A DNA stretch of 64,000 nucleotides, from positions 124,001 to 188,000 of the IMG/VR virus record IMGVR_UViG_3300028920_000001. One strand, written 5' to 3'. Below the pieces are notes generated by a model, which worked only from the letters and a program-made list of their open reading frames with translations, was not told where the DNA came from and did no database searches. Position 1 is the stretch's first letter; each line of letters opens with the position of its first letter. A program made the position numbers and the translations under genes. Below, in pieces: positions 6,141 through 60,981 of this stretch.

Positions 6141-6168
6141 ATATACAAACCGCACTCAGTTATTTACT
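6141..6168 (-). promoter_or_regulatory. phage promoter-like motif
   Basis: AGTAAA-N13-TTTGTATAT, ATG 6 nt downstream. Confidence 0.6.
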
Positions 6169-6172
6169 TGTT

Positions 6173-6395
6173 GGGTGAGACAGTTTAGTCTCACCCGGAA
6201 ATTCGATATCTACAGAAGAACCTAAGCTGATCTGTAAAAACCGAACTCCAGGTGTCTTGAGGGCCAATAACTTGATTGGCCCTCGGCTACCCGGCATTTA
6301 CAGAGAAAGATAAATTTATCTGCAAAAGCCGAGGCCGAGAGATGGTTCCACCACCCTAGCATCTACTGACTAACCATAACCAGTAGAAGCTAGGG
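6173..6395 (-). ncRNA. structured non-coding RNA candidate (five hairpins)
   Basis: Stems at 6173-6196, 6204-6243, 6259-6284, 6292-6331, 6354-6395 directly 3' of tRNA-Phe. Confidence 0.55.
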
Positions 6396-6404
6396 TAGGT
6401 GTAG

Positions 6405-6477
6405 TGCTCCCGGCCGGAATCGAACCAGCGACGCCGAGCTCTTCAGGCTCGCGCTCTACCAACTGAGCTACAGGAGC
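6405..6477 (-). tRNA. tRNA-Phe(GAA)
   Basis: Cloverleaf; CGAGC-CTGAAGA-GCTCG; 3' A-CTA. Confidence 0.92.
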
Positions 6478-6494
6478 TGGAAAACCTTGACGGG

Positions 6495-6534
6495 CGGTGT
6501 CTATGGAAGAACCGAAGCTGATCCATAGAAACCG
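6495..6534 (-). repeat. 40-nt hairpin motif copy C
   Basis: CGGTTTCTATGGA-N14-TCCATAGACACCG with C(TTCG)G tetraloop; related to 6204, 6292, 13602. Confidence 0.7.
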
Positions 6535-6551
6535 CAGCTTTGCCGCCAAGG

Positions 6552-6626
6552 TGGTGACCGCAGGGGGAATTGAACCCGCCGTTGTCGGTGTGAAAAACCG
6601 ATTTCCTACCATTAGAAGATGCGGCC
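6552..6626 (-). tRNA. tRNA-Glu(TTC)
   Basis: Cloverleaf; TCGGT-TTTTCAC-ACCGA; encoded CCA. Confidence 0.92.
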
Positions 6627-6678
6627 GAACCTGTTTTTTAAAACAGATTGATTGAACCTGTTATGAAAAAGAAAATTC

Positions 6679-7230
6679 GTGAAGACTAAACGACGAATAA
6701 GAAAATGGAATACGGACTATTGGAGAAAACAATATATTATTAGAAAAGTTAAAGCAATTGAATATAAAGGAGGAAAATGTATAAAATGTGGATATAACAA
6801 ATGTTATGGAGCTTTAGAATTTCATCATAGAAATCCAAAAGAAAAAGAGTATGTGTGGTATAAATTAAGAAAAAGGAGTTGGAGAAATATTAAAGAAGAA
6901 TTAGATAAATGTGATTTAGTTTGTGCTAATTGTCATAGGGAAGCACATCATGATCCTTCTCTCTTAAAGAAAGCAAAGGAGTGGAGAGATAAAATTGATT
7001 CAAAAATCCCAATAATAGAAATAAACTGCAAAAATTGTGGAAAAGTATTTAGACCTGTGAGTCATAAAATCCAATTTTGTTCGCCTAAGTGTTCCGCTAA
7101 ATCTCAAGAAAGAGTTCAATGGCCAAAAAATTTGCCACTACTTGTAGCTAAGTTATCAAAAAGAGCGGTAGCATTCCAACTCGGTGTATCAGACAAAGCT
7201 GTAGCAAAAAGACTTCATAGCCATCATTAG
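6679..7230 (+). CDS. HNH endonuclease with Zn-finger and HTH tail
   Basis: CxxCGY..C..ALEFHH...CDLVCANCHREAH; GVSDKAVAKR HTH; GTG start. Confidence 0.88.
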   Translation: MKTKRRIRKWNTDYWRKQYIIRKVKAIEYKGGKCIKCGYNKCYGALEFHHRNPKEKEYVWYKLRKRSWRNIKEELDKCDLVCANCHREAHHDPSLLKKAKEWRDKIDSKIPIIEINCKNCGKVFRPVSHKIQFCSPKCSAKSQERVQWPKNLPLLVAKLSKRAVAFQLGVSDKAVAKRLHSHH

Positions 7231-7848
7231 TGTCCCGGGCGGGATTCGAATCCGCGCGTAAAGCAAAGGTCTCGTTTAGGAAACGCGCTTCCCGCTACGT
7301 AAATTTCACAACCTGCCATGGCGACTCCCGCCCACCCCTAGTTGTTACCAGTTAGCGTCTGGTGTAGAGTTGGAGGGTGAGCCAGATCGTCAAGAAGCTT
7401 GGCAATGGCGGGTCGAGGATCGCCTACCTGCTCAAGTCCGGGTACGTCTTGAAGGTCCACCGTTACAGAGCGACGAGGGATAACCAAGTCGAAGCCAGGA
7501 TTTACTATCTGGCTCAGAAGATGGGGGTCGGACACCACTTCGCTCGATGTCGGCTGAGTCCTCGTGGGCTCGTGATGGAGTACGTTGACACGTCGATACG
7601 AGACGACCCAGGGCGGGGCTTTCCTTGGTGGGTTCGTCTCATTGACAAGTATCAGGTGGGGCTCACCCGGGACGGTCGGCTGGTGGCCTACGACTACGCC
7701 AACCTGTGGCCCCAAGAGCCTACTATCTGGTACGACGGGTTGCGCTACTTCCTACTGAAAGAGGACTCGACGAAAGGACCCCTGGCGGACACTCTGCGCC
7801 TCTTTCCTGGTGTGAGTTTGAAGTGAGGTTCCTTTGAGCCACCGGGAC
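7231..7848 (-). ncRNA. tmRNA-like RNA with non-Ala acceptor stem
   Basis: Acceptor GTCCCGG/CCGGGAC-A; T-loop TTCGAAT; long discontinuous 5'/3' helix; pk1-like pseudoknot; GC-rich. Confidence 0.55.
7377..7826 (+). CDS. protein kinase-like protein (minimal/degenerate)
   Basis: GNGGSRIAY, VLKV, E, VMEYV, GRLVAYDYA motifs; GC3-rich codons; catalytic-loop region atypical. Confidence 0.55.
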   Translation: MSQIVKKLGNGGSRIAYLLKSGYVLKVHRYRATRDNQVEARIYYLAQKMGVGHHFARCRLSPRGLVMEYVDTSIRDDPGRGFPWWVRLIDKYQVGLTRDGRLVAYDYANLWPQEPTIWYDGLRYFLLKEDSTKGPLADTLRLFPGVSLK

Positions 7849-8085
7849 TTAACTCTCCATAATGAGAGTTACTAAAACTTCTTCGGGAGTAAGAATTATA
7901 AATCCAGACGTATAACCCGGCTTCATTTTTGCAATTCGTTCTATACACTGTTCACGGCTCGAGAAATGACAGGCATGTCTAATGCTGCTGGTATATTCAT
8001 ATTCATGCCCATCAGACCCTTTAATTAATTTTACATACCAGTTAGTCCCATATCCACCATTTTGAATCACCCATGGGTAGTTCAT
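7849..8085 (-). CDS. hypothetical protein, C-terminal motif
   Basis: Ends ILTPEEVLVTLIMES*. Confidence 0.8.
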   Translation of the reverse strand: MNYPWVIQNGGYGTNWYVKLIKGSDGHEYEYTSSIRHACHFSSREQCIERIAKMKPGYTSGFIILTPEEVLVTLIMES

Positions 8086-8828
8086 TAACCTAGCCGATTT
8101 TGAATAATGGGACGATTAAACCAATTATTATCGTCACTTTTAACTTTTTCAAATTCAGGACGTGATAATTTCATTCTACCAACCACCTTTTCATCATCCT
8201 CGATTCTGATATAAATTCCTTCCATCAAAATTGAATCATCAGTTCCTTCCAACGATTTCAAGTGTTTTTTCCAGTCGGGAGTCTTGAAATTAGAAGGACC
8301 AATGAATTGGGCGAAATTATTCACCTTGCCGAAGATTCCTTGGAAAAGAATCGGTGCAGTTGGTAATTCTGTTAAAGTAAATGCTTGACTGAGCAAAGCA
8401 TGCCGCTTTGGTGTCGAAAGAAACAAGTCATTTTCTTTATCATAAACATCATACTCGACAAAATAGCCAGGTAAAGCATCATAGAAGACACGATGCTTAG
8501 CATAGAGCCACTCACCAAATAAAAGATAACGAGTTCCAAGAATTCGCTCTAAATCAGTCTTTTTGGAATAAGACCATTGTTTGAATAAATTAAATTGGCG
8601 TTCTCTTGGTCCACCAACTAAATAATGGCCTCGACTTTGCAATACTAGCCTATCATCAACTTCGGTTTGAGGAACTTCAAAACTGATTCCAACATTAGCT
8701 CCGTCAAGCTTTTCAGTCACGTATACTTTAAGTTTACCCCATTCTTTATAAATGTCGTCTCGAAGAACTACCTCGAGCCGTTGAGTTTTCGGAAATTTAA
8801 TCATCTTCCTCCATAATATAATCAACAA
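8085..8828 (-). CDS. RNA ligase (Rnl2-like ATP-dependent nucleotidyltransferase)
   Basis: TEKLDGAN (motif I), FGEW, YDVYD, EGIYIR, RMKL; start likely MIKFPK (~8804). Confidence 0.88.
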   Translation of the reverse strand: MLIILWRKMIKFPKTQRLEVVLRDDIYKEWGKLKVYVTEKLDGANVGISFEVPQTEVDDRLVLQSRGHYLVGGPRERQFNLFKQWSYSKKTDLERILGTRYLLFGEWLYAKHRVFYDALPGYFVEYDVYDKENDLFLSTPKRHALLSQAFTLTELPTAPILFQGIFGKVNNFAQFIGPSNFKTPDWKKHLKSLEGTDDSILMEGIYIRIEDDEKVVGRMKLSRPEFEKVKSDDNNWFNRPIIQNRLG

Positions 8829-9111
8829 TTAATTCATAACCCATATGTTCAAGCTCATCATAATCATGACGTTCAGAGTCTATATACGCTCCGTCTTCAT
8901 TTATTCCAATATATTGGAAATAATTTTCATATAAACGAAGAGCTGTACGTATTTTTCCAACTTCATTATGAATTCGAACATGGCATAACACTTTAGACGG
9001 AATACTTTTAAAAATCCTTAACGCATTATCATCTGAAATTAAAACAGTTTCAGATCCGTGCTTTCTAAGCTGATCTCGAACATATTGAAATTTTGTTTCT
9101 GCAAGATTCAT
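8797..9111 (-). CDS. hypothetical protein, variant C-terminal motif
   Basis: Ends IVDYIMEEDD*. Confidence 0.75.
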   Translation of the reverse strand: MNLAETKFQYVRDQLRKHGSETVLISDDNALRIFKSIPSKVLCHVRIHNEVGKIRTALRLYENYFQYIGINEDGAYIDSERHDYDELEHMGYELIVDYIMEEDD

Positions 9112-9419
9112 TAGCTATCCATTATCAAAGCTACCATAGTTTCTTTTGGACCAAGGACTTCAAAATCTGAGAACGGATACTGTTTACTTACATCTGCTCT
9201 CCATCTTTCCAATTCAGATGTAAGAAGCATCAAAGCTTCATTTTCATCTAAGAAAAACGTAGCATTATAAATGTTACCTACAAATTTCATTCCTGTATTC
9301 GATCGTGCAAAATATACTTGCGCGCTTGGTTCATAACCACCAATTACTTTCCATTTTCCATTATATTTAATTACATAACCATAACCTTCGTCATGGGCTT
9401 TAAAATGAGCATCAGACAT
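9111..9419 (-). CDS. hypothetical protein, C-terminal motif
   Basis: Ends VLGPKETMVALIMDS*. Confidence 0.8.
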   Translation of the reverse strand: MSDAHFKAHDEGYGYVIKYNGKWKVIGGYEPSAQVYFARSNTGMKFVGNIYNATFFLDENEALMLLTSELERWRADVSKQYPFSDFEVLGPKETMVALIMDS

Positions 9420-9658
9420 TATGATTCCATCAATCTGGCTATCATAACCTCTGCTGGGTTTAAAATAGTGAAATCTGAACGTATACTATCTTCGTCAACT
9501 AACGCATCCTCAATAATTCTTTCACACACAAATTGGCTAGAAAATAAAGCTGCTTTAGCAATTTCATTTATATAATTCTCAGCAGCTCTATAACTATGTG
9601 TAAAATAACCTAGATCTTTATGCCTAATCACCCACTTATCACCCCAATTACACATCAC
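9419..9658 (-). CDS. hypothetical protein, C-terminal motif
   Basis: Ends ILNPAEVMIARLMES*. Confidence 0.8.
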   Translation of the reverse strand: MMCNWGDKWVIRHKDLGYFTHSYRAAENYINEIAKAALFSSQFVCERIIEDALVDEDSIRSDFTILNPAEVMIARLMES

Positions 9659-9921
9659 GACTCCATTACCGAAAGTAATAACACCTTTTCAGGAGCATAA
9701 ATCTCAAAATCGTTAGCAAGTAATCGTAGATTCCGTGACTTATACCATTTAATAGCTTGCTGAGCTTCTACATAGGACGAATAATGAGTAGCATCTTCAA
9801 TTCTGGGCACTAGGAAAAAAGTGCCGGTAGCATTATGACCAAAGTACCCATCATACCCATCTCCGTCAAAATAAACAATATAACCTATACCAATTTCCAT
9901 TTTATCAAATTTTAAGCCCAT
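9655..9921 (-). CDS. hypothetical protein, C-terminal motif
   Basis: Ends IYAPEKVLLLSVMES*; ORF-track start lies inside tRNA-Thr so moved to the first downstream ATG. Confidence 0.75.
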   Translation of the reverse strand: MGLKFDKMEIGIGYIVYFDGDGYDGYFGHNATGTFFLVPRIEDATHYSSYVEAQQAIKWYKSRNLRLLANDFEIYAPEKVLLLSVMES

Positions 9922-9937
9922 AGTGTAATTTACATAG

Positions 9938-10008
9938 AGCCACCCCAGAGAATCGAACTCCAATCAGTTGTTTACGAAACAACTGCTCTACCATTGAGCT
10001 ACGGTGGC
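9938..10008 (-). tRNA. tRNA-Thr(CGT)
   Basis: Cloverleaf; GTTGT-TTCGTAA-ACAAC; G7.G66 mismatch; 3' T-CTA. Confidence 0.88.
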
Positions 10009-10012
10009 ATAG

Positions 10013-10084
10013 CGCCCCTGAAGAGAATCGAACTCTCCTCGTCTGATCGACAGTCAGATAGCCTCACCAGATGCTTACAGGGGC
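10013..10084 (-). tRNA. tRNA-Asp(GTC)
   Basis: Cloverleaf; TCTGA-CTGTCGA-TCAGA; 3' G-CTA. Confidence 0.9.
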
Positions 10085-10746
10085 ATATTTAAAGCTTGTT
10101 GTTTAGCCCAGTATCCGACAGGAGGGGTTTTGATTCCTCGCTTGTCGCAACGTTTCTTAATGGCTTTGTCAGAAACGCCAAATTTCTTAGCCAACGTGGT
10201 GACAGGTGTTTTCCAAATTAATTTTGCCAATTGGACGTCAGATGGCCACTTAGTCTTTTCAGTAATATGATCAATATTGTGATTAAATTTCTTAGCCATC
10301 TTTTTATAACATTGTCTACTACAAAATGGATATTTAAGGTTTTTCTTATGAGATCTCTTAAACTGTTTTCCACAATTACTGCAAGTTAACTCTTCAGCTT
10401 CTTGCCTTCTATATTTTTCTATCTTCATACGTTGTTTTTCTATTAGTTTTTGTCGAAGCTCGTCATGAATTTCTCTATGACAATTGGCGCAAACCAATTC
10501 ACATTTATCCAATTCTTTTTTAATTCTCTCAAATGATCTAGAATCTCCTTTAGAAATCCTAAGTTCCTTCTTAGTTGGATCTCTATGATGAAAATCAAGA
10601 GCTACTAGACACTTACAATATCCACATCGTTCACATTTACCACCTTTATACTGAACTGCCCTTTCTTTAATTTTTCTTCGATGTTCAGCTACTCGTAGTC
10701 TAGCCAGTTCTTGCTTTAGTTTTAAATCCATACTAAATTTAACCAC
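10075..10746 (-). CDS. HNH endonuclease with Zn-finger and HTH tail
   Basis: Paralog of 6679..7230 (ALDFHH...CELVCANCHREIH; GVSDKAIKKR); stop overlaps tRNA-Asp 5' end. Confidence 0.88.
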   Translation of the reverse strand: MVKFSMDLKLKQELARLRVAEHRRKIKERAVQYKGGKCERCGYCKCLVALDFHHRDPTKKELRISKGDSRSFERIKKELDKCELVCANCHREIHDELRQKLIEKQRMKIEKYRRQEAEELTCSNCGKQFKRSHKKNLKYPFCSRQCYKKMAKKFNHNIDHITEKTKWPSDVQLAKLIWKTPVTTLAKKFGVSDKAIKKRCDKRGIKTPPVGYWAKQQALNMPL

Positions 10747-10779
10747 AAAATCGAACTTGTGTCAATTTTGCATTACAGG

Positions 10780-10852
10780 CCCCGAGGGAAGGATTCGAAC
10801 CCTCAATCAAACGGGTAACAACCGTCCGGCTTGCCAATTTGCCTACCTCGGG
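10780..10852 (-). tRNA. tRNA-Asn(GTT) copy 1
   Basis: Cloverleaf; GACGG-TTGTTAC-CCGTT. Confidence 0.88.
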
Positions 10853-10861
10853 AAAATTTGA

Positions 10862-13761: not shown

Positions 13762-13776
13762 ATTGTAAAATCTTGT

Positions 13777-16334: not shown

Positions 16335-16362
16335 TTTTACACTGAAGCATAAAGAACTTACG
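16335..16362 (-). promoter_or_regulatory. phage promoter-like motif (tandem P2)
   Basis: CGTAAG-N13-AGTGTAAAA. Confidence 0.55.
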
Positions 16363-16373
16363 ATCTTACTCTA

Positions 16374-16401
16374 CCTTACAACGGACAACAGAAGACTTAC
16401 G
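16374..16401 (-). promoter_or_regulatory. phage promoter-like motif (tandem P1)
   Basis: CGTAAG-N13-GTTGTAAGG. Confidence 0.55.
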
Positions 16402-17059: not shown

Positions 17060-17552
17060 TTTCTCTACTACAAATGGGACACCACTTTTCTTTAGCTTCG
17101 TTTAGAGTTGCTTTCCATTGATGACCCTCAGAGCATTTCCATTCAAATTTTTTAGTATTAAGAAAACGTTTAAAATCAGAATTAGAAACAGTTAAACAAT
17201 TACCTTTAAAACTTTTAGCGATTTTGTGACATTCCAATAAACTAGATGCTCTATTATCACAATAAGGGCAGCATATTTTACCACTTTTAATTAGGATTTG
17301 CATATAACTATAATTTTCGGACCATTGATGACCCTCAGAGCATTTCCATTTCAAATTTTCAGTACGATTTGTATATATAGTACTTAAACATTTCCCATTA
17401 AAATTTGTCGCTAATTTCTTACAGTCTTGAATTGTTATTTTACGCCAACATATCGGACACCATGATCCCTGTTTAATACTAGAATATAGTGCTTTCCATT
17501 CGTGACCTTTAGCACAACGCCATCTGAGTTTAGTATTACTGCTTATTTTCAT
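17046..17552 (-). CDS. zinc-ribbon repeat protein (3 x WxCxxGHxW...WCPxC)
   Basis: WRCAKGHEW, WKCSEGHQW x2. Confidence 0.85.
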   Translation of the reverse strand: MKISSNTKLRWRCAKGHEWKALYSSIKQGSWCPICWRKITIQDCKKLATNFNGKCLSTIYTNRTENLKWKCSEGHQWSENYSYMQILIKSGKICCPYCDNRASSLLECHKIAKSFKGNCLTVSNSDFKRFLNTKKFEWKCSEGHQWKATLNEAKEKWCPICSRENVAA

Positions 17553-17673: not shown

Positions 17674-17704
17674 TTCTGGAAAATACAGCAAACATGACTC
17701 AATT

Positions 17705-17886
17705 TCCGTCTAGGCGACCTTCTTCCTAGAACAGATTTGACACCAGTTTCCATGACTATCCATTCATGACCTTCATCACAGCGCCTTAATAGCAGAATTT
17801 ATTTTTAATATGACTATGTGTGGCTCTCCATTCATGACCTTTGGCACAGCGCCATTTTAATTTAGTGATAGTGCTATTTATTTCAT
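17705..17886 (-). pseudogene. two frameshifted zinc-ribbon repeats
   Basis: WRCAKGHEW, RCDEGHEW and WCQICSRKKVA* readable only across frameshifts. Confidence 0.65.
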
Positions 17887-20382: not shown

Positions 20383-20410
20383 TGCAAATTAGACACTCTA
20401 GAACGTACAC
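20383..20410 (+). promoter_or_regulatory. phage promoter-like motif (divergent pair, right)
   Basis: TGCAAA-N13-AACGTACAC, ATG 6 nt downstream. Confidence 0.55.
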
Positions 20411-24796: not shown

Positions 24797-24804
24797 GATT
24801 TAGT

Positions 24805-25104
24805 TTACATCTCCATGAGCGTAGCCACTTCAACTTCATCTAAATCCACTAGTTCAAATTCATCATGATGATAAGCTGAATCACCTATCCAGTAAGGAAC
24901 AATAGCCCTGATAATAAACCAATTACAATCGCAAGTCTTGCCTTTACATTTTTTACAAACCCCATAGGTAGGACGTTTTTCAATATCAATAATCTTCCCG
25001 TATACTTGTTGCTCAAAAGCAATATTATCAAAATGTTTGCTGGGATCCTTAACTCTAACTGTTTGACGAACCCACCTTCGATACAATGGTGATACAAGTT
25101 TCAT
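24805..25104 (-). CDS. hypothetical protein, C-terminal motif
   Basis: CKKC..C.C; ends EVATLMEM*. Confidence 0.75.
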   Translation of the reverse strand: MKLVSPLYRRWVRQTVRVKDPSKHFDNIAFEQQVYGKIIDIEKRPTYGVCKKCKGKTCDCNWFIIRAIVPYWIGDSAYHHDEFELVDLDEVEVATLMEM

Positions 25105-25685: not shown

Positions 25686-25713
25686 AAATACAACAACGCT
25701 AGACCAATTTACG
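25686..25713 (-). promoter_or_regulatory. phage promoter-like motif
   Basis: CGTAAA-N13-GTTGTATTT. Confidence 0.6.
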
Positions 25714-26830: not shown

Positions 26831-26851
26831 GGTCTATATTACACCACCAGC

Positions 26852-28316: not shown

Positions 28317-28344
28317 TCTTACATCCGGAGAGATTCGATTTACG
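28317..28344 (-). promoter_or_regulatory. phage promoter-like motif
   Basis: CGTAAA-N13-GATGTAAGA; upstream block overlaps stop of 28340..28924. Confidence 0.55.
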
Positions 28345-29156: not shown

Positions 29157-29184
29157 AAGTACGACTCAGATTTGTAGATTTACG
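29157..29184 (-). promoter_or_regulatory. phage promoter-like motif
   Basis: CGTAAA-N13-GTCGTACTT, ATG 6 nt downstream. Confidence 0.65.
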
Positions 29185-30274: not shown

Positions 30275-30302
30275 ATATACAAACTAATAACTAAGACTTC
30301 CA
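30275..30302 (-). promoter_or_regulatory. phage promoter-like motif
   Basis: TGGAAG-N13-TTTGTATAT, ATG 6 nt downstream. Confidence 0.5.
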
Positions 30303-32809: not shown

Positions 32810-32837
32810 ATATACAAAACTCAAGCCGGCATTTACA
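32810..32837 (-). promoter_or_regulatory. phage promoter-like motif
   Basis: TGTAAA-N13-TTTGTATAT. Confidence 0.6.
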
Positions 32838-35813: not shown

Positions 35814-35841
35814 GAGTACGATCTGATCGGACTGATTTCCG
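35814..35841 (-). promoter_or_regulatory. phage promoter-like motif
   Basis: CGGAAA-N13-ATCGTACTC. Confidence 0.55.
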
Positions 35842-38175: not shown

Positions 38176-38203
38176 CTATACATCTAAGAATGGTGGATTT
38201 TCG
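38176..38203 (-). promoter_or_regulatory. phage promoter-like motif
   Basis: CGAAAA-N13-GATGTATAG. Confidence 0.5.
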
Positions 38204-39056: not shown

Positions 39057-39084
39057 ACATACAAAGAAACCGCCCGGATTTACG
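39057..39084 (-). promoter_or_regulatory. phage promoter-like motif
   Basis: CGTAAA-N13-TTTGTATGT. Confidence 0.6.
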
Positions 39085-42748: not shown

Positions 42749-42776
42749 TTGTACGTCGGCCAAAGCCGGACTTACG
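42749..42776 (-). promoter_or_regulatory. phage promoter-like motif
   Basis: CGTAAG-N13-GACGTACAA; upstream block overlaps stop of 42772..42987. Confidence 0.6.
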
Positions 42777-42987: not shown

Positions 42988-44430
42988 CTAATAAATTAGC
43001 CCTGGTTCTTCAATAAATCCAGCTGCAAGAAGTTGTTGTTTGATAGAATTCCAGTCCCCACGAATCTCAAAAATAGCTTCAGCAGTCTGGACTAGAGTCT
43101 GCGGTACATATTGATTTACCCAATTTGCATCAATGTCCTGTTCATATTGACATTGTTCACGTTCCCACCACATCTTAGGACACATTATTACTGTGTTGGG
43201 ATCATAATTCGAATTACCGGATAAAGTGACTCCAAATAACATATCTGATGGCTTCAACGTACTAAAGTCGATAAAAGTAGGCCCATCTGGCCCTTCCCCA
43301 AGAATTGCTGGCTCTTCGACAAAGCCAGCCGCAAGCAACTTTTGTCTAAGCGGCTCCCAGTCACAGTTAAAATGGAAAAGAGACTCACAGGCTTGATTCA
43401 TTTCAGATGGAACGTATTGCTTCACCCAATTATAATCAATATCAGTGTCATGTACACAATGCTCTCTCTCGAAGTATTCTCGAGCCACCATGTAGACGCC
43501 CTCCTCCGTATGTCGTGCAAACAGCATGTCTGATGGCTGAATCTTGCTATAATCCGGAACCCAGAACACGCCATCTACCTTCAACACACTGTTAGGGCCA
43601 GGTGCAGTTTGAGGAGGGGTGTACGGAGTGCCCTGACCGGCAGTTTTAAGCGCAGGATTGTGCACAAACCCGATTTGACTCAAATCGTGAGTAATCATTT
43701 TGATAGCGCCCTGTGGCGTAAAAGACTGGCCTGGGGCAAAATTTTCATAAGCTGCTTCAGCTATATCGGGATCAATCTCATACATAGCTTCCATTTCTTC
43801 GTACAAATAGTCAGGCCAGTGAACTTGATCACAAACGTACTCCAACAGTGGAGATTGATCATAAAGACAATGATGCTGATCGAAATGAACCCTAGGCGCT
43901 AACGCCACGCTAAGACCATCAGGAGTATTATCAACATCAAAATAGAAATCCGCTGGTTCCAATTTTGACCAGGCCACTGCTTCCACGCCAATTGGCCCTA
44001 ACTTTGCCAAATCCGGGTCTTCCAATGTCTTATCATCAATATCCCACGGCGCAGGAACCTTCTGGACGATTTCGTCGGGGACTCTTTTGGGATCGACGTC
44101 CGCACCTCCTAATTCCGGATTCGGCTCGGGCGGAGCAAAAGCTAGACCAAAACGACCATCATTGAAACTATCCTTACGACCGCTATGATCCATAACGAGC
44201 TTGTGATGCAAATTGACTTGAAGTAATGCAACCTCCCCTTCATCTGCTTCAAATCCGTTGCTCATCGCCGTAGCGTGTTCAGAACAGAATCCGAACAATT
44301 TCACTTTAGTCACGGTAGGAACCACTCGATAATTGGTGGTTTCCTTCCCGCAAACCAAACATTTCTTTGAAAGATCATAAAACTCAAGAACACGTGACCA
44401 ATCCAGATCAAAAATATTCGTCGGTTCCAT
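42988..44430 (-). CDS. acidic protein with N-terminal Zn finger and three internal repeats
   Basis: CLVCG...CSEH; repeats PxDxxF...E..C..D.D...W...YVP...E..F...LLAAGF. Confidence 0.85.
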   Translation of the reverse strand: MEPTNIFDLDWSRVLEFYDLSKKCLVCGKETTNYRVVPTVTKVKLFGFCSEHATAMSNGFEADEGEVALLQVNLHHKLVMDHSGRKDSFNDGRFGLAFAPPEPNPELGGADVDPKRVPDEIVQKVPAPWDIDDKTLEDPDLAKLGPIGVEAVAWSKLEPADFYFDVDNTPDGLSVALAPRVHFDQHHCLYDQSPLLEYVCDQVHWPDYLYEEMEAMYEIDPDIAEAAYENFAPGQSFTPQGAIKMITHDLSQIGFVHNPALKTAGQGTPYTPPQTAPGPNSVLKVDGVFWVPDYSKIQPSDMLFARHTEEGVYMVAREYFEREHCVHDTDIDYNWVKQYVPSEMNQACESLFHFNCDWEPLRQKLLAAGFVEEPAILGEGPDGPTFIDFSTLKPSDMLFGVTLSGNSNYDPNTVIMCPKMWWEREQCQYEQDIDANWVNQYVPQTLVQTAEAIFEIRGDWNSIKQQLLAAGFIEEPGLIY

Positions 44431-44436: not shown

Positions 44437-44464
44437 AAGTACGACAAAAGTCAGCCAATTTACG
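44437..44464 (-). promoter_or_regulatory. phage promoter-like motif
   Basis: CGTAAA-N13-GTCGTACTT, ATG 6 nt downstream. Confidence 0.65.
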
Positions 44465-45657: not shown

Positions 45658-45685
45658 AGATACAAATAAGAAAAACGAATTTACG
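45658..45685 (-). promoter_or_regulatory. phage promoter-like motif
   Basis: CGTAAA-N13-TTTGTATCT; upstream block overlaps stop of 45681..45977. Confidence 0.6.
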
Positions 45686-51028: not shown

Positions 51029-51056
51029 AAATACAGCGGAGCTGTAACGATTTACG
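51029..51056 (-). promoter_or_regulatory. phage promoter-like motif
   Basis: CGTAAA-N13-GCTGTATTT; upstream block overlaps stop of 51052..51423. Confidence 0.6.
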
Positions 51057-53599: not shown

Positions 53600-53997
53600 T
53601 ATCCTTTTCCTTTATGATTCTCGTTGGGACGATTCTCAGCTACTTTGCGAAATGGAATACCAGGGTCATTCATCAAGCGACCCATTTGACAAATTGCAGC
53701 CGAAAACAACCCGGAGTTATTCTGCCAGAAATGCTTATAATTTTCGCGATCCTTCACTGAATCAAATGATAAAATCTCGCATCCACTTTGCTTACCAGCG
53801 GCATTCTGCACACCCAAATATCGAACTGTTGATTCCTCACTACAGTCTGGGCAATGAGTAATTTTGCCGCCAGCTCTTCGCTTTTCAGGGCTGTGTAGGT
53901 CGAACTCGTCTCCACATTCAATACATACACGAATCTGGCTCATATTCAGTAATACGCGGAGGTTGAGCCAATCTACGACTCCATAATTTCTTCGCAC
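53599..53997 (-). CDS. zinc-ribbon protein
   Basis: CIECG...HCPDC; start likely MSQIRVC (53943). Confidence 0.75.
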   Translation of the reverse strand: MRRNYGVVDWLNLRVLLNMSQIRVCIECGDEFDLHSPEKRRAGGKITHCPDCSEESTVRYLGVQNAAGKQSGCEILSFDSVKDRENYKHFWQNNSGLFSAAICQMGRLMNDPGIPFRKVAENRPNENHKGKG

Positions 53998-54575: not shown

Positions 54576-54624
54576 CTCAGGATCTACACCTGAGCAGATC
54601 TTCAGTTAATACTAAGGGAAAACA

Positions 54625-55327: not shown

Positions 55328-55355
55328 GGATACGCAGGACGGCTAGCAATTTGCG
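55328..55355 (-). promoter_or_regulatory. phage promoter-like motif with shared leader
   Basis: CGCAAA-N13-TGCGTATCC followed by AGGATCGGAGGTA. Confidence 0.6.
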
Positions 55356-56406: not shown

Positions 56407-56434
56407 AATTACGGCGGAGAACTGCAAATTTTCG
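56407..56434 (-). promoter_or_regulatory. phage promoter-like motif (divergent pair, left)
   Basis: CGAAAA-N13-GCCGTAATT, ATG 6 nt downstream. Confidence 0.55.
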
Positions 56435-56451
56435 CATGCTCACAGCCGGCC

Positions 56452-56479
56452 CGTAAATCAAGTTAATCCTGTCGTATCC
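56452..56479 (+). promoter_or_regulatory. phage promoter-like motif (divergent pair, right)
   Basis: CGTAAA-N13-GTCGTATCC, ATG 7 nt downstream. Confidence 0.65.
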
Positions 56480-57578: not shown

Positions 57579-57606
57579 CGTAAATATTGAATTTTTACGT
57601 GTACAG
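57579..57606 (+). promoter_or_regulatory. phage promoter-like motif
   Basis: CGTAAA-N13-CGTGTACAG, ATG 8 nt downstream. Confidence 0.55.
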
Positions 57607-57614
57607 TAGACTAC

Positions 57615-58307
57615 ATGACTTCGGTAACAGATTCAGAAATAGAACAAGAGATTCAATATTTAGAACGAATTAAACGGATAGATCAACAGATAGATCAAAT
57701 TGAATGCGTAAAGGATAGAATTTATAAAGACCTCGAATCGGACATTAATCAGGCTTGTGCAGAAATAGCCAAATTGATTCGAGATGCAAAACCAACCACA
57801 GCCAGTGTCATGGCTGGAGGTTCTACCATCCAATGTAGAGTCCGGGCCCTTGGAAGAATTTATCGTACTTCAGCCTGTGACGAATGGATTCGGGATGCTG
57901 ATTTATCTGTTTGGGGTAAAAATTTATTTATTGGTACCATAATTAGATTGTTTAAATTAGACAATCATTCAATCATTGACCCTCTCAGGAAAAAGGCTCT
58001 AGATTTAGCTACTGAACGAATTCCTAAAATTTCTGGGCATTTTCAATTTACCGATCAAATCAACTCATTTTTAGAAAAACCTGAAATTTATCCTGAATGT
58101 GAAAAATTAGTTAAAGAAATCTACGCCAAATTTCGGGTTGTGCTCTATCAAGGCAATCTCGAGCAAAAGAAACAGGCACACGAATTAAGAAAAGCTCTGA
58201 AGAAACTGAAACCAATTTTACTTGATGCGCTTAGAGCTGGTCTTACAGATGAAGACCTGCAGACTTTAGTTGATGAATCTCGGGTTGAGATCGTAATGAA
58301 AAGTTAA
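57615..58307 (+). CDS. hypothetical protein, extended C-terminal motif
   Basis: Ends AGLTDEDLQTLVDESRVEIVMKS*. Confidence 0.85.
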   Translation: MTSVTDSEIEQEIQYLERIKRIDQQIDQIECVKDRIYKDLESDINQACAEIAKLIRDAKPTTASVMAGGSTIQCRVRALGRIYRTSACDEWIRDADLSVWGKNLFIGTIIRLFKLDNHSIIDPLRKKALDLATERIPKISGHFQFTDQINSFLEKPEIYPECEKLVKEIYAKFRVVLYQGNLEQKKQAHELRKALKKLKPILLDALRAGLTDEDLQTLVDESRVEIVMKS

Positions 58308-58708
58308 GCAGCGGCTTTCTTTTGTTTCTTGGACTCCAGTTTAATAGTGGTTTCATTTACAACCCACCAATCGCTAGCCTTCATTCGCTTCCCAAGATGG
58401 GTACAAATTTGGTCACTTACAAAAGTGGATGGTAATCCAGGTTTGCCTGAAGCAAATTGCCTGAGGACCCACTTCAAATAAGGATTTCCATCGGCGAACT
58501 GCTGGAATTCCGTGACATAATCGCGGGTTTCGCATAGCGCCCGGCCCACGTCGCGGTCAGAGAACGCCGGAAAGCCTGTCACGTCACGCTCCATGCCGGT
58601 TTCCTCGATTGTCAGGTCGTCAATTCCAGCTTCATTCAGCCAGAACTGGATAGCAGCAATTATCACTGCTTCAATGCTGCTAGTACTTTTCGCATAGATA
58701 TTTTTCAT
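58304..58708 (-). CDS. hypothetical protein, paralog of 45979..46407
   Basis: 134 aa. Confidence 0.75.
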   Translation of the reverse strand: MKNIYAKSTSSIEAVIIAAIQFWLNEAGIDDLTIEETGMERDVTGFPAFSDRDVGRALCETRDYVTEFQQFADGNPYLKWVLRQFASGKPGLPSTFVSDQICTHLGKRMKASDWWVVNETTIKLESKKQKKAAA

Positions 58709-58857
58709 ATCTTCGTCTTTCTAAAATTGGTTGTGGCCGGAATTGCGACTGAATCCCGCCGGCAGCGGCAAATCCCAGAATTATTCTTAAAACATCAGTC
58801 TTATAAAATTTATAATACCGATTATACCTGCCCAAATTTATTATACAACGACGGATA

Positions 58858-59157
58858 TCAGTCTGTCATCAAGGCATGAACCTTGGCCAGCGGTGTTAGG
58901 GCCTCGGCTAAAACAATGGCTTCAAGATGATCTAAATTATAATCGACAATTTCTTCTTTATGTAGAGATCCCCAATCAACCCAAACATTGAATTGATTAC
59001 CGAAGGTCATGAAATGCCAATGGTCTTTACGATCAATTATATCAACCAAATAATAACGCTCATTCAGTTTAAACTCAAATTCCCAATGTGTAACTTCCTT
59101 AGTTTCACAGAGTAGAGTGGCTCGGGTGATCATTAGCTGTAGACTGGTGACGTACAA
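58858..59157 (-). CDS. hypothetical protein, C-terminal motif
   Basis: Ends KVHALMTD*; start uncertain. Confidence 0.7.
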   Translation of the reverse strand: MYVTSLQLMITRATLLCETKEVTHWEFEFKLNERYYLVDIIDRKDHWHFMTFGNQFNVWVDWGSLHKEEIVDYNLDHLEAIVLAEALTPLAKVHALMTD

Positions 59158-59465
59158 TTATGTCCAGTTTTACCATCGTAAACAAGTTTAGTACCTTGCC
59201 AAACCTGGCAGTTGGCTGATGCAAAAGTGATTTCCGTGTATGGATTGCGACTTGCAATTATATGTCCGATCAATAGCGCCCGAATTGGCCTAAAGGGCCC
59301 AATCACATATGACTCATTACGCCGAAAAGGTGACGGCTCTATTATAATCACCACTTTGCGCTTAGGATATCGGAATGTGTGATAAATAGCAACCACACAT
59401 TCCGACAGTGGACCTGCGAAGCAGATCAGGAGAAACACGCCTAGGGCAATCGGGAAACCAATCAC
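59133..59465 (-). CDS. membrane-anchored hypothetical protein
   Basis: N-terminal hydrophobic helix; coupled to vWA gene. Confidence 0.65.
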   Translation of the reverse strand: MIGFPIALGVFLLICFAGPLSECVVAIYHTFRYPKRKVVIIIEPSPFRRNESYVIGPFRPIRALLIGHIIASRNPYTEITFASANCQVWQGTKLVYDGKTGHNCTSPVYS

Positions 59466-60934
59466 ATCTTCTGTGGTCGGAGCGGAGCAACCCGTCCGAA
59501 AGTGGGCTTGTAGTTTGCATGATACTGGGTCAGGACCCAGACCACATCACATTTCGGAGCCAGCTCCTTCGGGATCTCGCCGCAGTAACCATCCGTCAAG
59601 ACGATCACACAGTCGAATTCATTCCCTAGGTGCTGCGGGAACTCCCGGAAGAAATCGTCGAAGACGGTGCCTCCGCGACCAACGACCTTGGTTCGCTTGA
59701 GGTCTTCCATGGAGTCAATCTTGGTGACTGCATTCCAGTCCGGGCTGGCATCCACCGGGACGACGTATCCCTCTGTGTTGCCAAGGCACTTGAGCTGGCT
59801 GATGCCATACACCAGATCATCGTCACTCATGCTGCCAGAGGTATCCAGCATCGCCAACCACCGTGGCTTGTGCGTGTGACGCTTGGGAAGGTACTGACGC
59901 ATCCGACCGCGAGCCGGTGTGATCCAGCGCTTGCGATAGCGCTTGTAATCGTTTTGCATGCCAGCGTCCTGCACCTTTTTCATGCAGGCACTTCGCACCA
60001 GGTCGGTGAATTTCAAGGTCGGCTTGATCAATTCGCCGAGATAGTCTTCGATTTCAGACGGGACAGTGCCTCGCATTTGCACGGCCTGTTCGGCTGCACG
60101 CATCACATCACTCTGGACTTCCTGCTTGGAGACAGCTGCGTCCATGTGATTGTCCATAGGAGCCGGCAAGCCATCTCCATAGCCCTGTCCTGAACTAGGG
60201 TCAATCGGCGAGCCACAATGCGGGCAGCACATACCCTTATGGTCACAGTTCGGCCGGTTTTTGCACGGCCCTGGAGGATTGGGCTTACCCGTCTTGGGAT
60301 CGATGGTCAGGGCAGCGCACTCTGGGCACTTACGGGGAGAATTCTCCCAGTGCCTCATGATCTCGTCGTAAATCTGCTCCGGAGGCCGGCCATATTGAGA
60401 CACATCAGCATAGCAGCAATCGCCCTTCGGAATATCACCTTGGCCATCGATGAAGGCCAGAAGGTCCTTCAGATGCCAGGGATCCCCAATATTCCCGCCC
60501 CAAAGCTTGCCCTTGCGTTGGGTCTTGACGTGATCACTTTCGATACACGAATTGACCACGTAGTCCATCGCAATATTGCATTTGCGAGGCTCTGCCGCGC
60601 GCATTCGCTTGGGATGGAGAAAGATGATGTGATAGGACTCGTGCTGCATGATGATCGGACATTCATCCCGGGACAATTTGAACAGGAATTCCGGATTCCA
60701 GTAATATCTCTTACCGTCTGTTGCAGCAGTAGTGAGTTTCTTACCACTGGGTAGGGTATCTCGCAGCTCGTGCGGCTTCGGGGCAGCCAGGCTGAACAAG
60801 AAAGGGTTGCCTCCGTTTTCGGGCTTGCGGAACATGCGCGTCATGCACGACGCCACCTTTTCCTGCAGCTCGTACATCTTTTGAGCGTCAGACACCAGAC
60901 CGTTGGGATCTGTGAGGCGGACTCCGATTTGCAT
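59462..60934 (-). CDS. DUF2201-like metallopeptidase/vWA domain protein
   Basis: TAATDG, HESYH (HExxH), NIAMDYVVN; C-terminal MIDAS DTSGSMS and GRGGT; Cys-rich insert. Confidence 0.9.
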   Translation of the reverse strand: MQIGVRLTDPNGLVSDAQKMYELQEKVASCMTRMFRKPENGGNPFLFSLAAPKPHELRDTLPSGKKLTTAATDGKRYYWNPEFLFKLSRDECPIIMQHESYHIIFLHPKRMRAAEPRKCNIAMDYVVNSCIESDHVKTQRKGKLWGGNIGDPWHLKDLLAFIDGQGDIPKGDCCYADVSQYGRPPEQIYDEIMRHWENSPRKCPECAALTIDPKTGKPNPPGPCKNRPNCDHKGMCCPHCGSPIDPSSGQGYGDGLPAPMDNHMDAAVSKQEVQSDVMRAAEQAVQMRGTVPSEIEDYLGELIKPTLKFTDLVRSACMKKVQDAGMQNDYKRYRKRWITPARGRMRQYLPKRHTHKPRWLAMLDTSGSMSDDDLVYGISQLKCLGNTEGYVVPVDASPDWNAVTKIDSMEDLKRTKVVGRGGTVFDDFFREFPQHLGNEFDCVIVLTDGYCGEIPKELAPKCDVVWVLTQYHANYKPTFGRVAPLRPQKM

Positions 60935-60953
60935 TTATGATACCTCCGATCCT

Positions 60954-60981
60954 GGATACAACGCGCGATGCCTGATTTACG
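60954..60981 (-). promoter_or_regulatory. phage promoter-like motif with shared leader
   Basis: CGTAAA-N13-GTTGTATCC followed by AGGATCGGAGGTA. Confidence 0.65.

What the first reader, a model, noticed from the sequence alone, without database searches (positions are those of the whole stretch)
6141..60981. Phage-specific promoter-like motif YGNAAR-T-N12-NNYGTA, about 21 copies, many before leaderless ATGs
Seen: a fixed-spacing bipartite motif (best copies CGTAAA-N13-GTCGTACTT at 29157 and 44437) lies upstream of gene starts on both strands, including two divergent pairs (20354-20410, 56407-56479) and a tandem pair (16335-16401). In about 10 cases an ATG follows 6-8 nt after the downstream block with no RBS, which corrects several start sites (32803, 42742, 56400). 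Established: AAA-containing -35 and CGTA-type -10 boxes resemble ECF-sigma promoters. Inference: a phage-encoded or co-opted alternative sigma factor drives largely leaderless transcripts.
Basis: partly seen in the sequence, partly recalled or inferred. Interest (0 to 1): 0.6.

Follow-up and report, generated by a model that had tools for sequence, protein, structure and literature searches.

The report
Phage sigma promoters making leaderless mRNAs
A 427-kb uncultured phage and its relatives carry dozens of copies of a two-box promoter, probably read by the phage's own small sigma factor, spaced so that the predicted transcripts begin exactly at the AUG or at the ribosome-binding site.

Summary
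YGNAART-N14-YGTA occurs 25 times in the window (about 1 expected) and 66 times in the 426,960-bp phage genome, mostly at 140-260 kb. Enrichment exists only at spacer N14 with GTA.

The landmark is the 10th base after GTA. It is a purine in about 90% of sites, preceded by a pyrimidine, and it is either the A of an ATG (10 window genes at exactly 9 nt) or the first G of GGAGGTGA. This fits a transcription start that yields leaderless or Shine-Dalgarno-first mRNAs.

The genome has no detectable RNA polymerase but has three sigma-like genes. One is a 219-aa two-domain ECF-like sigma, 52-62% identical across a clade of 240-436-kb uncultured phages and essentially absent from bacterial genomes. Four complete relatives are enriched for the same motif, and in the two read in full most homologous genes carry it. 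A more distant relative has a shifted variant (GGAARTC-N12-CGTY).

The closest known cases are the phiEco32 and 7-11 phage sigma promoters.

No RNA data exist. The start site and the identity of the sigma are inferred.

The parts
6144..6168 (-). Degenerate bipartite promoter (AGTAAAT-N14-TGTA). ATG at 6134 lies 9 nt after GTA (122-aa ORF).
16377..16401 (-). Bipartite promoter, upstream copy of the tandem pair. No ORF at +1.
16338..16362 (-). Bipartite promoter, downstream copy of the tandem pair. No ORF at +1. A terminator-like hairpin lies at 16222-16210 and tRNA-Lys, Lys and Gln lie further downstream at 15821-15483.
17684..17708 (-). Bipartite promoter. ATG at 17673 lies 10 nt after GTA (45-aa ORF).
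20383..20407 (+). Bipartite promoter. ATG at 20417 lies 9 nt after GTA (83 aa). The divergent weak partner on the - strand at about 20357-20381 has CATA as its -10.
25689..25713 (-). Bipartite promoter. The next ORF start is 25603, giving an 85-nt leader.
28320..28344 (-). Bipartite promoter inside the 3' end of the upstream gene. The next start is 28214 (236 aa).
29160..29184 (-). Bipartite promoter and the best-scoring copy here (19.2 bits). ATG at 29150 lies 9 nt after GTA (82 aa), so a leaderless transcript is predicted.
30278..30302 (-). Bipartite promoter. ATG at 30268 lies 9 nt after GTA (130 aa).
32813..32837 (-). Bipartite promoter. ATG at 32803 lies 9 nt after GTA (84 aa). The longer TTG starts lie inside the promoter or its discriminator.
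35817..35841 (-). Bipartite promoter. GAGGTG begins at the predicted +1. ATG at 35796 (268 aa).
38179..38203 (-). Bipartite promoter. ATG at 38145 lies 33 nt after GTA, with a GGAG SD (114 aa).
39060..39084 (-). Bipartite promoter. ATG at 39045 lies 14 nt after GTA, giving a predicted 5-nt leader (196 aa).
42752..42776 (-). Bipartite promoter. ATG at 42742 lies 9 nt after GTA (115 aa). Homologues in G001, G004 and G005 align from residue 1. The G001 homologue has the same motif 46 nt upstream of its start.
43105..43129 (-). Pattern match inside the 480-aa gene with nothing at +1. Probably a chance match or a weak internal site.
44440..44464 (-). Bipartite promoter. ATG at 44430 lies 9 nt after GTA (480-aa protein of unknown family).
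45661..45685 (-). Bipartite promoter. ATG at 45647 lies 13 nt after GTA, giving a predicted 4-nt leader (145 aa).
51032..51056 (-). Bipartite promoter. GGAG begins at the predicted +1. ATG at 51009 (232 aa).
53953..53977 (-). Bipartite promoter found by PWM only (CGTAGAT -35 box, 18.8 bits). ATG at 53943 lies 9 nt after GTA (114 aa). The G001 homologue carries the motif.
55331..55355 (-). Bipartite promoter. GGAGGT begins at the predicted +1. GTG at 55311 (228 aa).
56410..56434 (-). Bipartite promoter, the - member of the divergent pair. ATG at 56400 lies 9 nt after GTA (332 aa).
56452..56476 (+). Bipartite promoter, the + member of the divergent pair and the top PWM score (21.5 bits). ATG at 56487 lies 10 nt after GTA (178 aa).
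57579..57603 (+). Bipartite promoter. ATG at 57615 lies 11 nt after GTA (230 aa).
60957..60981 (-). Bipartite promoter. GGAGGT begins at the predicted +1. ATG at 60934 (490-aa DUF2201 metallopeptidase/VWA protein). The G001 and G004 homologues carry the same motif with unrelated spacer sequence.
61680..61704 (-). Pattern match inside a gene with no ORF of 40 aa or more starting within 130 nt downstream. Status uncertain.
61878..61902 (-). Bipartite promoter. ATG at 61868 lies 9 nt after GTA (125 aa).
62400..62424 (-). Bipartite promoter. ATG at 62374 lies 25 nt after GTA (140 aa).
815..822 (-). -10-only element (TGTAgattT type) 9 nt before ATG 809 (173 aa).
13764..13771 (+). -10-only element TGTAAAAT 9 nt before ATG 13777 (118 aa).
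17065..17072 (-). -10-only element 9 nt before ATG 17059 (214 aa).
24802..24809 (-). -10-only element TGTAAACT 9 nt before ATG 24796 (262-aa Apyc1-like metallo-beta-lactamase).
26836..26843 (-). -10-only element TGTAATAT 9 nt before ATG 26830 (364-aa M16 peptidase-like protein).
54581..54588 (-). -10-only element 9 nt before ATG 54575 (200 aa).
63146..63153 (-). -10-only element TGTATTTT 9 nt before ATG 63140 (244 aa).

Best explanation
These are promoters of an uncultured 427-kb phage that encodes no detectable RNA polymerase. I infer that it redirects the host core enzyme with its own sigma factors.

The bipartite form is C-G-t-A-A/g-A/g-T, then 14 nt, then Y-G-T-A. It has the architecture of an ECF (group IV) sigma promoter: a -35 box read by a sigma4 domain and a GTA -10 core read by a sigma2 domain. 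The most likely reader is the phage's 219-aa two-domain ECF-like sigma (genome 44101-44757, outside the window).

Transcription is predicted to start at the 10th nucleotide after GTA. That position carries either the A of the start codon (leaderless mRNA) or the first G of GGAGGTGA, giving an mRNA that begins with its Shine-Dalgarno sequence and has an 11-15-nt leader.

A second, more numerous form shares the GTA core but has no -35 box: aawTGTAwwnT, then 5 nt, then ATG. It is either read by the same sigma through an extended -10, as in phiEco32, or by another sigma.

Shown: the motif statistics, its geometry, its conservation and lineage-specific variation, and the presence and fold of the sigma.

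Inferred: the start site, the use of host core polymerase, which sigma binds, and that the AUG-first RNAs are translated.
For: Motif and geometry.
- There are 25 window matches against about 1 expected and 66 in the genome, concentrated at 140-260 kb among small genes.
- A scan over spacers 11-17 and all four last bases finds enrichment only at N14 plus YGTA: 66, 62 and 72 against about 5 in G000, G001 and G004.
- The distance from GTA to an ORF-opening ATG has a spike at 9 nt (32 sites, plus 5 at 10 nt and 3 at 11 nt) and a second mode at 18-25 nt.
- In that second mode, GGAGG(TGA) begins at offset 9 in 10 of 18, 8 of 19 and 15 of 25 listed sites in three genomes.
- Offset 8 is a pyrimidine in 83-90% of sites and offset 9 a purine in 79-90%, in three genomes. 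These columns were not used to pick the sites. A pyrimidine-purine pair at the start site is reported for predicted ECF promoters (PMC7776599).

Polymerase and sigma genes.
- No RNA polymerase beta or beta' hit was found in the genome. The T7-like polymerase family search was uninformative because it matched nothing in its controls either.
- There are three sigma-like genes.
- The 219-aa protein has a Sigma70_r2 hit (34 bits against a cut-off of 24).
- Its AlphaFold model (pLDDT 83) matches ECF sigma2 domains over residues 23-118 (Z 6-7.9) and sigma4/LuxR HTH domains over residues 143-219 (Z 5-6.9).
- It is 52-62% identical in contigs of 240-436 kb. It occurs in only 2 of 185,579 species genomes, both MAG contigs.

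Related phages.
- Complete relatives that carry the sigma are enriched for the same motif: 62 against 5 in the control, 23 against 2, 21 against 4, and 72 against 7.
- 21 of 31 homologues in G001 and G004 of motif-driven genes keep the motif upstream.
- G005, whose sigma is 52% identical, has instead YGGAARTC-N12-CGTY at spacer 13 (27 and 26 against about 3), including upstream of several homologous genes.

Known parallels.
- phiEco32 gp36 reads tAATGTAtA with starts 6-8 bp downstream.
- 7-11 gp47 reads GTAAtg-N16-aCTA (PMC8948821).
Against: - No transcription start site or RNA data exist for this phage. The only holders of the sequence are DNA metagenomes.
- The sigma falls below NCBIfam's ECF cut-off (29 against 42.9 bits) and has no Pfam region-4 hit. 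The fold Z-scores are in the range the tool calls 'middling'.
- The stretch SAHDPRKSSFGHY in the region-2 domain is invariant or nearly so across lineages, although the base after GT differs (A in G000-type phages, C/T in G005). That it is the specificity loop is my inference from sigmaE structures. If so, sigma-promoter co-variation is not visible where it would be expected.
- The motif-rich region looks like an early or accessory gene region, including an Apyc1-like gene. That would require the sigma to be present very early.
- The spacer is 1-2 bp shorter than in classical ECF promoters.
Confidence: 0.68

Rival explanations
1. The motif is a promoter, but it is read by a host ECF sigma factor that the phage co-opts, for instance one induced by envelope stress at infection, rather than by the phage's own sigma.
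For: - The consensus resembles cellular ECF promoters. The G005 variant GGAARTC...CGTC looks even more like one.
- The motif-rich region holds small accessory genes that look early, and only host factors are present at that time.
- The conserved stretch in the phage sigma's region-2 domain does not change where the -10 base changes.
Against: - The same motif, with identical spacing, is kept in phages of 40% and 50% GC that probably infect different hosts.
- The motif changes with the phage lineage.
- The phages all carry a conserved, phage-specific ECF-like sigma.
- Host identity is unknown. EF-Tu gives only weak hints of Myxococcota or Alphaproteobacteria.
Confidence: 0.12
2. The motif is a promoter, but its reader is another phage factor. 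One candidate is the 396-aa group-1-like sigma (genome 65862-67049). Another is the 259-aa protein with two sigma-region-4 domains (genome 282367-283143), acting as a -35-box activator in the manner of T4 MotA-style sigma appropriation.
For: - Both proteins are conserved in G001, G004 and G005 (29-32% and 60-65% identity).
- Both boxes begin with CGTA, 21 bp apart (two helical turns), which would suit a tandem-HTH protein.
- The -10-only form contains TAnnnT, as in primary-sigma promoters.
Against: - In G005 the two boxes are not a direct repeat (GGAAGTC and CGTC) and the spacing shifts by one. The CGTA repeat is therefore probably coincidental.
- G at -12 is conserved in 68-82% of TAnnnT-N5-ATG sites. 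This is a feature of ECF-type GTC/GTA -10 elements and of phiEco32 gp36 promoters, not of primary-sigma promoters.
- The group-1-like sigma is only about 30% identical between phages that share the identical motif.
Confidence: 0.15
3. The motif is not a promoter. It would instead be a regulatory operator, or a signal at the RNA level for processing or translation, placed at a fixed distance from start codons.
For: The fixed 9-nt distance to ATG could in principle be a translational signal. No RNA data exclude this.
Against:
- It also stands before a stretch without an ORF, upstream of tRNA genes.
- When the ATG is 20-24 nt away, it is the SD, not the ATG, that keeps the 9-nt distance. The constant is therefore a point on the DNA, not a distance to the start codon.
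- A pyrimidine-purine pair sits at that point.
Confidence: 0.05

Closest known systems
Middle and late promoters of coliphage phiEco32, read by its ECF-like sigma gp36 (consensus tAATGTAtA, start 6-8 bp downstream; PMC8948821)
   Same: - A phage-encoded small sigma redirects host core RNA polymerase.
- The -10-only form here (aawTGTAwwnT) shares the core AATGTA.
- The predicted start, at the 10th nt after GTA, falls in the same range.
- A local sequence match exists in region 2 (KIVHKFF...QEV against KVVHKFF...QEV).
   Different: - Homology is not established (hhalign probability 13.5%).
- gp36 is reported to lack region 4 and to use no -35 box, whereas this sigma has a predicted sigma4-like domain and a bipartite promoter class.
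- The genome here is 427 kb against 77 kb.
- Leaderless or SD-first placement is not reported for phiEco32 in the paper I read.
Late promoters of Salmonella phage 7-11, read by sigma gp47 (GTAAtg-N16-aCTA; PMC8948821)
   Same: Both are bipartite phage-sigma promoters with a GTAA -35 box and a short four-base -10 ending in TA. Both were identified upstream of many phage genes.
   Different: - The spacer here is 2 bp shorter and the -10 is CGTA rather than aCTA.
- There is no detectable sequence similarity between the sigmas (hhalign probability 1.3%).
[quoted passage not shown]
Cellular ECF (group IV) sigma promoters, for example E. coli sigmaE (GTC -10 core) and B. subtilis sigmaW/sigmaX (CGTA-type -10; consensus from my own knowledge)
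   Same: - Two short boxes with rigid spacing.
- A -35 box with an A-run and a -10 with a CGT/GT core.
- A pyrimidine-purine pair at the start (PMC7776599).
- The model's sigma2 domain matches sigmaE region 2, including structures solved with -10 DNA (4lup, 5or5).
   Different: - The -35 is GTAAAT rather than GGAAC/TGAAAC.
- The spacer is 1-2 bp shorter.
- The sigma is phage-specific, falls below the NCBIfam ECF cut-off, and I identified no anti-sigma partner (not searched for).
- The motif occurs about 66-100 times in one replicon rather than in a small regulon.
Leaderless gene expression: -10 elements adjacent to ORFs in Deinococcus-Thermus (PMC12340547), lambda cI, and Thermus phage phiYS40 middle and late genes (Sevostyanova et al. 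2007, cited there; details from my own knowledge)
   Same: A -10 element lies at a fixed short distance from ATG with no SD, implying that transcription starts on the start codon.
   Different: - In those cases the primary sigma's TAnnnT element is used. Here the -10 core is GTA and one class has an ECF-like -35 box.
- Here the same promoter point is used alternatively for AUG-first and SD-first mRNAs. One homologous gene (42742) is ATG-first in G000, while its G001 homologue has the motif 46 nt upstream.

Membership tests
ECF (group IV) sigma-70 family, for the 219-aa protein at genome 44101-44757 | A sigma region-2 domain | tested here: met
   Pfam Sigma70_r2 hit: E 2.3e-8, 34.1 bits against a cut-off of 24. 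Model residues 23-118 match ECF sigma2 structures at Z 6-7.9.
ECF (group IV) sigma-70 family, for the 219-aa protein at genome 44101-44757 | A sigma region-4 (HTH) domain that reads the -35 box | tested here: inconclusive
   There is no Pfam r4 hit. Model residues 143-219 match sigma4 and LuxR-type HTH domains at Z 5-6.9, a range the tool warns is middling.
ECF (group IV) sigma-70 family, for the 219-aa protein at genome 44101-44757 | Only two domains: no region 1.1 and no region 3 | tested here: met
   The protein is 219 aa. The model has two helical domains joined by a low-confidence linker. No r3 hit was found.
ECF (group IV) sigma-70 family, for the 219-aa protein at genome 44101-44757 | Passes the curated family model (NCBIfam TIGR02937 sigma70-ECF) | tested here: not met
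   29.1 bits against a cut-off of 42.9. I therefore describe it as ECF-like rather than filing it as a member.
ECF (group IV) sigma-70 family, for the 219-aa protein at genome 44101-44757 | Binds core RNA polymerase and directs initiation at its cognate promoter | not testable with these tools
   This needs biochemistry.
ECF-type promoter | Two conserved boxes with rigid spacing | tested here: met
   Enrichment occurs only at N14 plus YGTA (N13 plus YGTY in G005) among spacers 11-17.
ECF-type promoter | A -35 box with an AAC-like core and a -10 with a CGT/GTC-like core | tested here: inconclusive
   The -10 is CGTA (CGTC/T in G005), which fits. The -35 is GTAAAT (GGAAGTC in G005), not AAC.
ECF-type promoter | A pyrimidine-purine pair at the transcription start, a fixed distance from the -10 | tested here: met
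   Offset 8 is a pyrimidine in 83-90% of sites and offset 9 a purine in 79-90%, in three genomes. The feature is described in PMC7776599.
ECF-type promoter | An experimentally mapped start site dependent on the sigma | not testable with these tools
   No public RNA run holds the sequence.
phiEco32 gp36 / 7-11 gp47 phage sigma family | Sequence homology of the sigma | tested here: not met
   hhalign probability is 13.5% (gp36) and 1.3% (gp47). Foldseek lists the gp36 complex 9m7y_F only at rank 15, E 1.1.
phiEco32 gp36 / 7-11 gp47 phage sigma family | Promoter consensus tAATGTAtA, or GTAAtg-N16-aCTA | tested here: inconclusive
   The consensus here is similar but not identical: aawTGTAwwnT and GTAAAT-N14-CGTA.
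Leaderless mRNA | The transcript's 5' end coincides with the start codon | not testable with these tools
   This is inferred from the fixed 9-nt spacing, the purine at that point, and the SD taking the same position in the other class.
Leaderless mRNA | No Shine-Dalgarno sequence upstream of the start, and an AUG start codon | tested here: met
   The 9 nt between GTA and ATG carry no SD-like 4-mer in the sites classed as leaderless. In the window all ten are ATG. The searches looked for ATG only at this spacing.

The most novel reading that the evidence does not exclude
A whole clade of uncultured 360-436-kb phages may run a transcription-translation design not described before. In it, a phage-specific ECF-like sigma places +1 with single-nucleotide precision, so that mRNAs begin either with AUG or with the full GGAGGUGA Shine-Dalgarno sequence. 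One homologous gene (42742) is ATG-first in G000 while its G001 homologue has the motif 46 nt upstream. Two promoter classes, bipartite and -10-only, share one GTA core. This would give the phage a built-in way to shift its genes between ribosome-recruitment modes, for instance by infection stage or after it has modified the host translation apparatus. The G005 variant would be a natural example of a promoter drifting in specificity along with its phage lineage.
Probability: 0.35. Interest if true: 0.7.

Novelty: new variant of a known kind. Interest (0 to 1): 0.6.

Why it matters
- **Annotation.** Huge phages are known almost only from metagenomes, and their gene regulation is unexplored. This gives a sequence-readable promoter code for a large clade: more than 250 sigma homologues, in contigs up to 436 kb. 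It allows operons and true start codons to be annotated. About 100 genes in this genome appear to start at an ATG that standard start-finders would miss or extend.
- **A testable factor.** It names a candidate sigma that can be expressed and tested without culturing the phage.
- **Translation mechanism.** The AUG-first and SD-first alternatives at one fixed point are an unusually clean natural system for comparing leaderless and SD-led initiation.
- **Tools.** The motif and its G005 variant are potential orthogonal sigma-promoter pairs for synthetic biology.

Tried and rejected
- **Close relatives.** blastn of 4 kb and tblastn of the 480-aa protein against GenBank phages found nothing. A single-protein scan of IMG/VR found nothing. 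Relatives were reached only through the sigma alignment. The sigma has one weak GenBank phage hit: an uncultured 485-kb phage at 26% identity.
- **RNA evidence.** No public run on record as RNA holds the stretch. The source is a marine sediment metagenome, with small shares in hot-spring and wetland runs.
- **Phage RNA polymerase.** No Pfam hit for beta or beta'. The T7-like search was uninformative, since nothing matched in its controls either. Very divergent phiKZ-type subunits cannot be excluded.
- **Phage factors that might favour leaderless translation.** No IF3, IF1 or S21 was found.
- **Host.** The nearest named cellular EF-Tu proteins (65-69% identity) are from Myxococcota, Alphaproteobacteria and Acidobacteriota MAGs. 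This is too weak to name a host. The two genome hits of the sigma are MAG contigs (Lentisphaeria, Methylobacter) that are probably mis-binned phage DNA.
- **Homology to known phage sigmas.** Homology to phiEco32 gp36 and 7-11 gp47 is not supported. PDB sequence search of the sigma profile gave nothing meaningful. The PHROG hit is only a generic 'RNA polymerase sigma factor' family.
- **Operator for the tandem sigma4 protein.** I considered whether the CGTA...CGTA direct repeat marks such an operator. I set this aside because the G005 variant is not a repeat.
- **Fragmentary relatives.** G006-G013 are 15-60% complete and are uninformative about motif presence.
- **Gene calls.** My home-made gene caller misses some genes, for example 59462-60934. 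Counts that depend on it are rough. The key statistics were recomputed without gene calls.

Full report
**What the window is.** The window is bases 124,001-188,000 of a single 426,960-bp IMG/VR virus record with direct terminal repeats, 40% GC. It is a jumbo phage.
- In the window it encodes EF-Tu, RtcB, a helicase, an Apyc1-like metallo-beta-lactamase, an M16 peptidase-like protein, a LAGLIDADG/HNH endonuclease, a DUF2201 protein and 12 tRNAs.
- Elsewhere it encodes helicases, UvsX, ribonucleotide reductase, a clamp loader, terminase and tail fibres.
- It has no close relative among GenBank phages.
- Its DNA is held by a marine sediment metagenome, and no RNA run holds it.

- YGNAART-N14-YGTA occurs 25 times in the window against 1.02 +/- 1.05 in shuffles, and 66 times in the genome, mostly at 140-260 kb.
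- An iterated weight matrix gives C-G-t-A-A/g-A/g-T-y, N13, Y-G-T-A-t-c, with about 100 genome sites against about 13 in shuffled sequence.
- I scanned every spacer from 11 to 17 and every fourth base of the downstream box. Enrichment appears in exactly one cell, N14 with YGTA: 66 against 3-14 elsewhere.
The second divergent pair has one weak member.

**A fixed landmark lies 9 nt downstream.**
- Among matrix hits, the distance from GTA to the first ORF-opening ATG is 9 nt in 32 cases, 10 nt in 5 and 11 nt in 3. A second mode lies at 18-25 nt.
- In the window, ten genes have the ATG exactly 9 nt after GTA.
- In the second mode the sequence GGAGG(TGA) begins at that same offset 9. This holds in 10 of 18 sites in this genome and in 8 of 19 and 15 of 25 listed sites in two relatives.
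- What is constant is therefore a point on the DNA, occupied by the A of AUG or by the first G of the Shine-Dalgarno sequence.
- That point is a purine in 88%, 90% and 79% of exact-pattern sites in three genomes. The base before it is a pyrimidine in 83%, 85% and 90% (also 90 of 98 and 82 of 98 matrix hits). These columns played no part in selecting the sites.
- A pyrimidine-purine pair at a fixed distance from the -10 is the reported signature of start sites at predicted ECF promoters (PMC7776599).
- I infer that transcription starts at the 10th nucleotide after GTA. This would produce leaderless mRNAs, or mRNAs that begin with their SD and have 11-15-nt leaders. It is an inference from geometry; no 5' ends have been measured.

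**The motif is part of a larger family.**
- Without any -35 requirement, YGTA lies 9 or 10 nt before the ATG of 101 called genes across the whole genome. The counts are TGTA 55 at 9 nt and 25 at 10 nt, and CGTA 17 at 9 nt, against about 4 at other offsets.
- Sites lacking the -35 box have their own logo, a-a-w-T-G-T-A-w-w-n-T then 5 nt then ATG, with T at -6 in 77%. In sites that have the box, T at -6 and T at -13 are much weaker.
- The G is not an artefact of my selection. Among all TAnnnT-N5-ATG sites, the base before TA is G in 68-82% in four genomes.
- So there are two classes that share a GTA core: a bipartite class clustered among small genes at 140-260 kb, and a -10-only class spread genome-wide.

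**Who reads it.**
- The genome has no hit to RNA polymerase beta or beta' families. The T7-like family search was uninformative.
- It has three sigma-like genes: a 396-aa group-1/2-like sigma, a 259-aa protein with two region-4 domains, and a 219-aa protein with a region-2 hit.
- The 219-aa protein models as two helical domains (pLDDT 83). The first matches ECF sigma2 domains: RpoE, SigK, sigmaE region 2, SigC, BldN and SigR, at Z 6-7.9. The second matches sigma4 and LuxR-type HTH domains, at Z 5-6.9. These Z values are moderate, and the protein is below NCBIfam's ECF cut-off. I therefore call it ECF-like.
- It has more than 250 homologues at 52-62% identity, many on contigs of 240-436 kb. It occurs in only 2 of 185,579 species-representative genomes, both MAG contigs. 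It is a phage protein.

**Comparative evidence.**
- Four complete related phages that carry the sigma are enriched for the same pattern: 62, 23, 21 and 72 matches against 5, 2, 4 and 7 for the reversed pattern.
- Two of them, read in full (50% GC against 40% here), show the same single-cell enrichment, the same two distance modes and the same pyrimidine-purine pair.
- Of 31 homologues in those two phages of genes that the motif drives here, 21 have the motif within 120 nt upstream. The boxes are kept and the spacer sequences are unrelated.
- One gene (42742) is ATG-first here, while its G001 homologue has the motif 46 nt upstream of its start.
- A more distant relative (G005, sigma 52% identical) lacks the pattern (5 against 4). 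Instead it has 27 and 26 copies of YGNAART-N13-YGTC/YGTT, against about 3. Its logo is YGGAARTC-N12-CGTY, followed 7 nt later by a T-G step and often GGAGG. This variant sits upstream of several of the same homologous genes.
- A motif that stays constant across phages of different base composition, and changes with phage lineage, argues for a phage-encoded reader rather than a host one.
The stretch SAHDPRKSSFGHY in the region-2 domain is invariant or nearly so between the lineages. If that stretch is the specificity loop, which I infer from sigmaE structures, this weakens the case for simple co-variation.

**Comparison with what is known.**
- The nearest characterised systems are the sigma-dependent promoters of phiEco32-like phages (PMC8948821). 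gp36 reads a single element tAATGTAtA with starts 6-8 bp downstream. 7-11 gp47 reads GTAAtg-N16-aCTA.
- The two classes here resemble these two consensus sequences closely. The sigmas, however, are not detectably homologous.
- Cellular ECF promoters share the architecture and the CGT/GT -10 core. They differ in the -35 box and have 1-2 bp more spacer.
- Leaderless expression from a -10 next to the ORF is known in Deinococcus-Thermus (PMC12340547) and in some phages. Jumbo phages without their own polymerase but with sigma factors are a recognised group (PMC7824862).
- In the papers searched I found no description of a promoter code for this clade, nor of one promoter point serving both AUG-first and SD-first mRNAs. 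That search is not exhaustive.

**Verdict.** It is a new variant of a known kind: promoters for a phage-encoded alternative sigma. Two features deserve experimental follow-up: the single-nucleotide coupling of the predicted start site to AUG or SD, and the coexistence of bipartite and -10-only classes on one GTA core.

Noticed in passing
window 16195-16401 (- strand): The tandem promoters are followed by no ORF at +1. About 110-150 nt downstream lies a terminator-like hairpin with a T-run (16222-16210). This may be a small non-coding RNA, or the leader of the tRNA-Lys/Lys/Gln cluster at 15821-15483. There is no Rfam hit other than tRNAs. The fold z-score is only -1.0.
   Followed up: partly
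window 842-15821 (- strand): There are twelve tRNA genes (His, Pro, Phe, Glu x2, Thr, Asp, Asn x2, Gln, Lys x2), next to phage-encoded EF-Tu (1069-2247) and RtcB RNA ligase (3317-4558).
   Followed up: partly
window, e.g. upstream of starts 9111, 9419, 14133, 24796-25104, 33936, 48831, 52521: Many genes inside operons have GTGATGGA(A/G) or AGGTGATG 5-8 nt before the start codon (ATGGAA 31 against 7 expected; GTGATG 19 against 4). GGTGAT is complementary to the part of the 16S rRNA 3' tail just upstream of CCUCC, so this may be a shifted SD used for coupled translation.
   Followed up: partly
window 24008-24796 (- strand): This is an Apyc1-like anti-Pycsar metallo-beta-lactamase (Pfam PF23023, 116 bits). 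It is a candidate counter-defence gene and is preceded by a -10-only element 9 nt before its ATG.
   Followed up: no
window 35909-36994 (+ strand); genome 5654, 55444, 283181, 322031, 352348: A LAGLIDADG/HNH homing endonuclease gene lies on the opposite strand inside a run of - strand genes. The genome holds at least five paralogous large HNH / Mom-like endonuclease genes.
   Followed up: no
G005 (L073-L088), e.g. 13913-82532: The related 308-kb phage has about 50 copies of a variant promoter, YGGAARTC-N12-CGTY. It is often followed by TGGGCGG... GC-rich palindromes before the SD. These may be attenuator or operator hairpins in the leaders.
   Followed up: partly
genome 282367-283143 (L014:568-1344): This is a 259-aa protein with two tandem sigma-70 region-4 domains and no region 2. 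It is 60-65% identical in three related phages. Its function is unknown; it could be a transcription activator or an anti-sigma-like factor.
   Followed up: partly
window 9931-9934 / tRNA-Thr 9937-10008 (- strand): A TGTA -10-only element, 9 nt before ATG 9921, lies just downstream of the 3' end of a tRNA gene. The promoter element and the tRNA gene are tightly packed.
   Followed up: no
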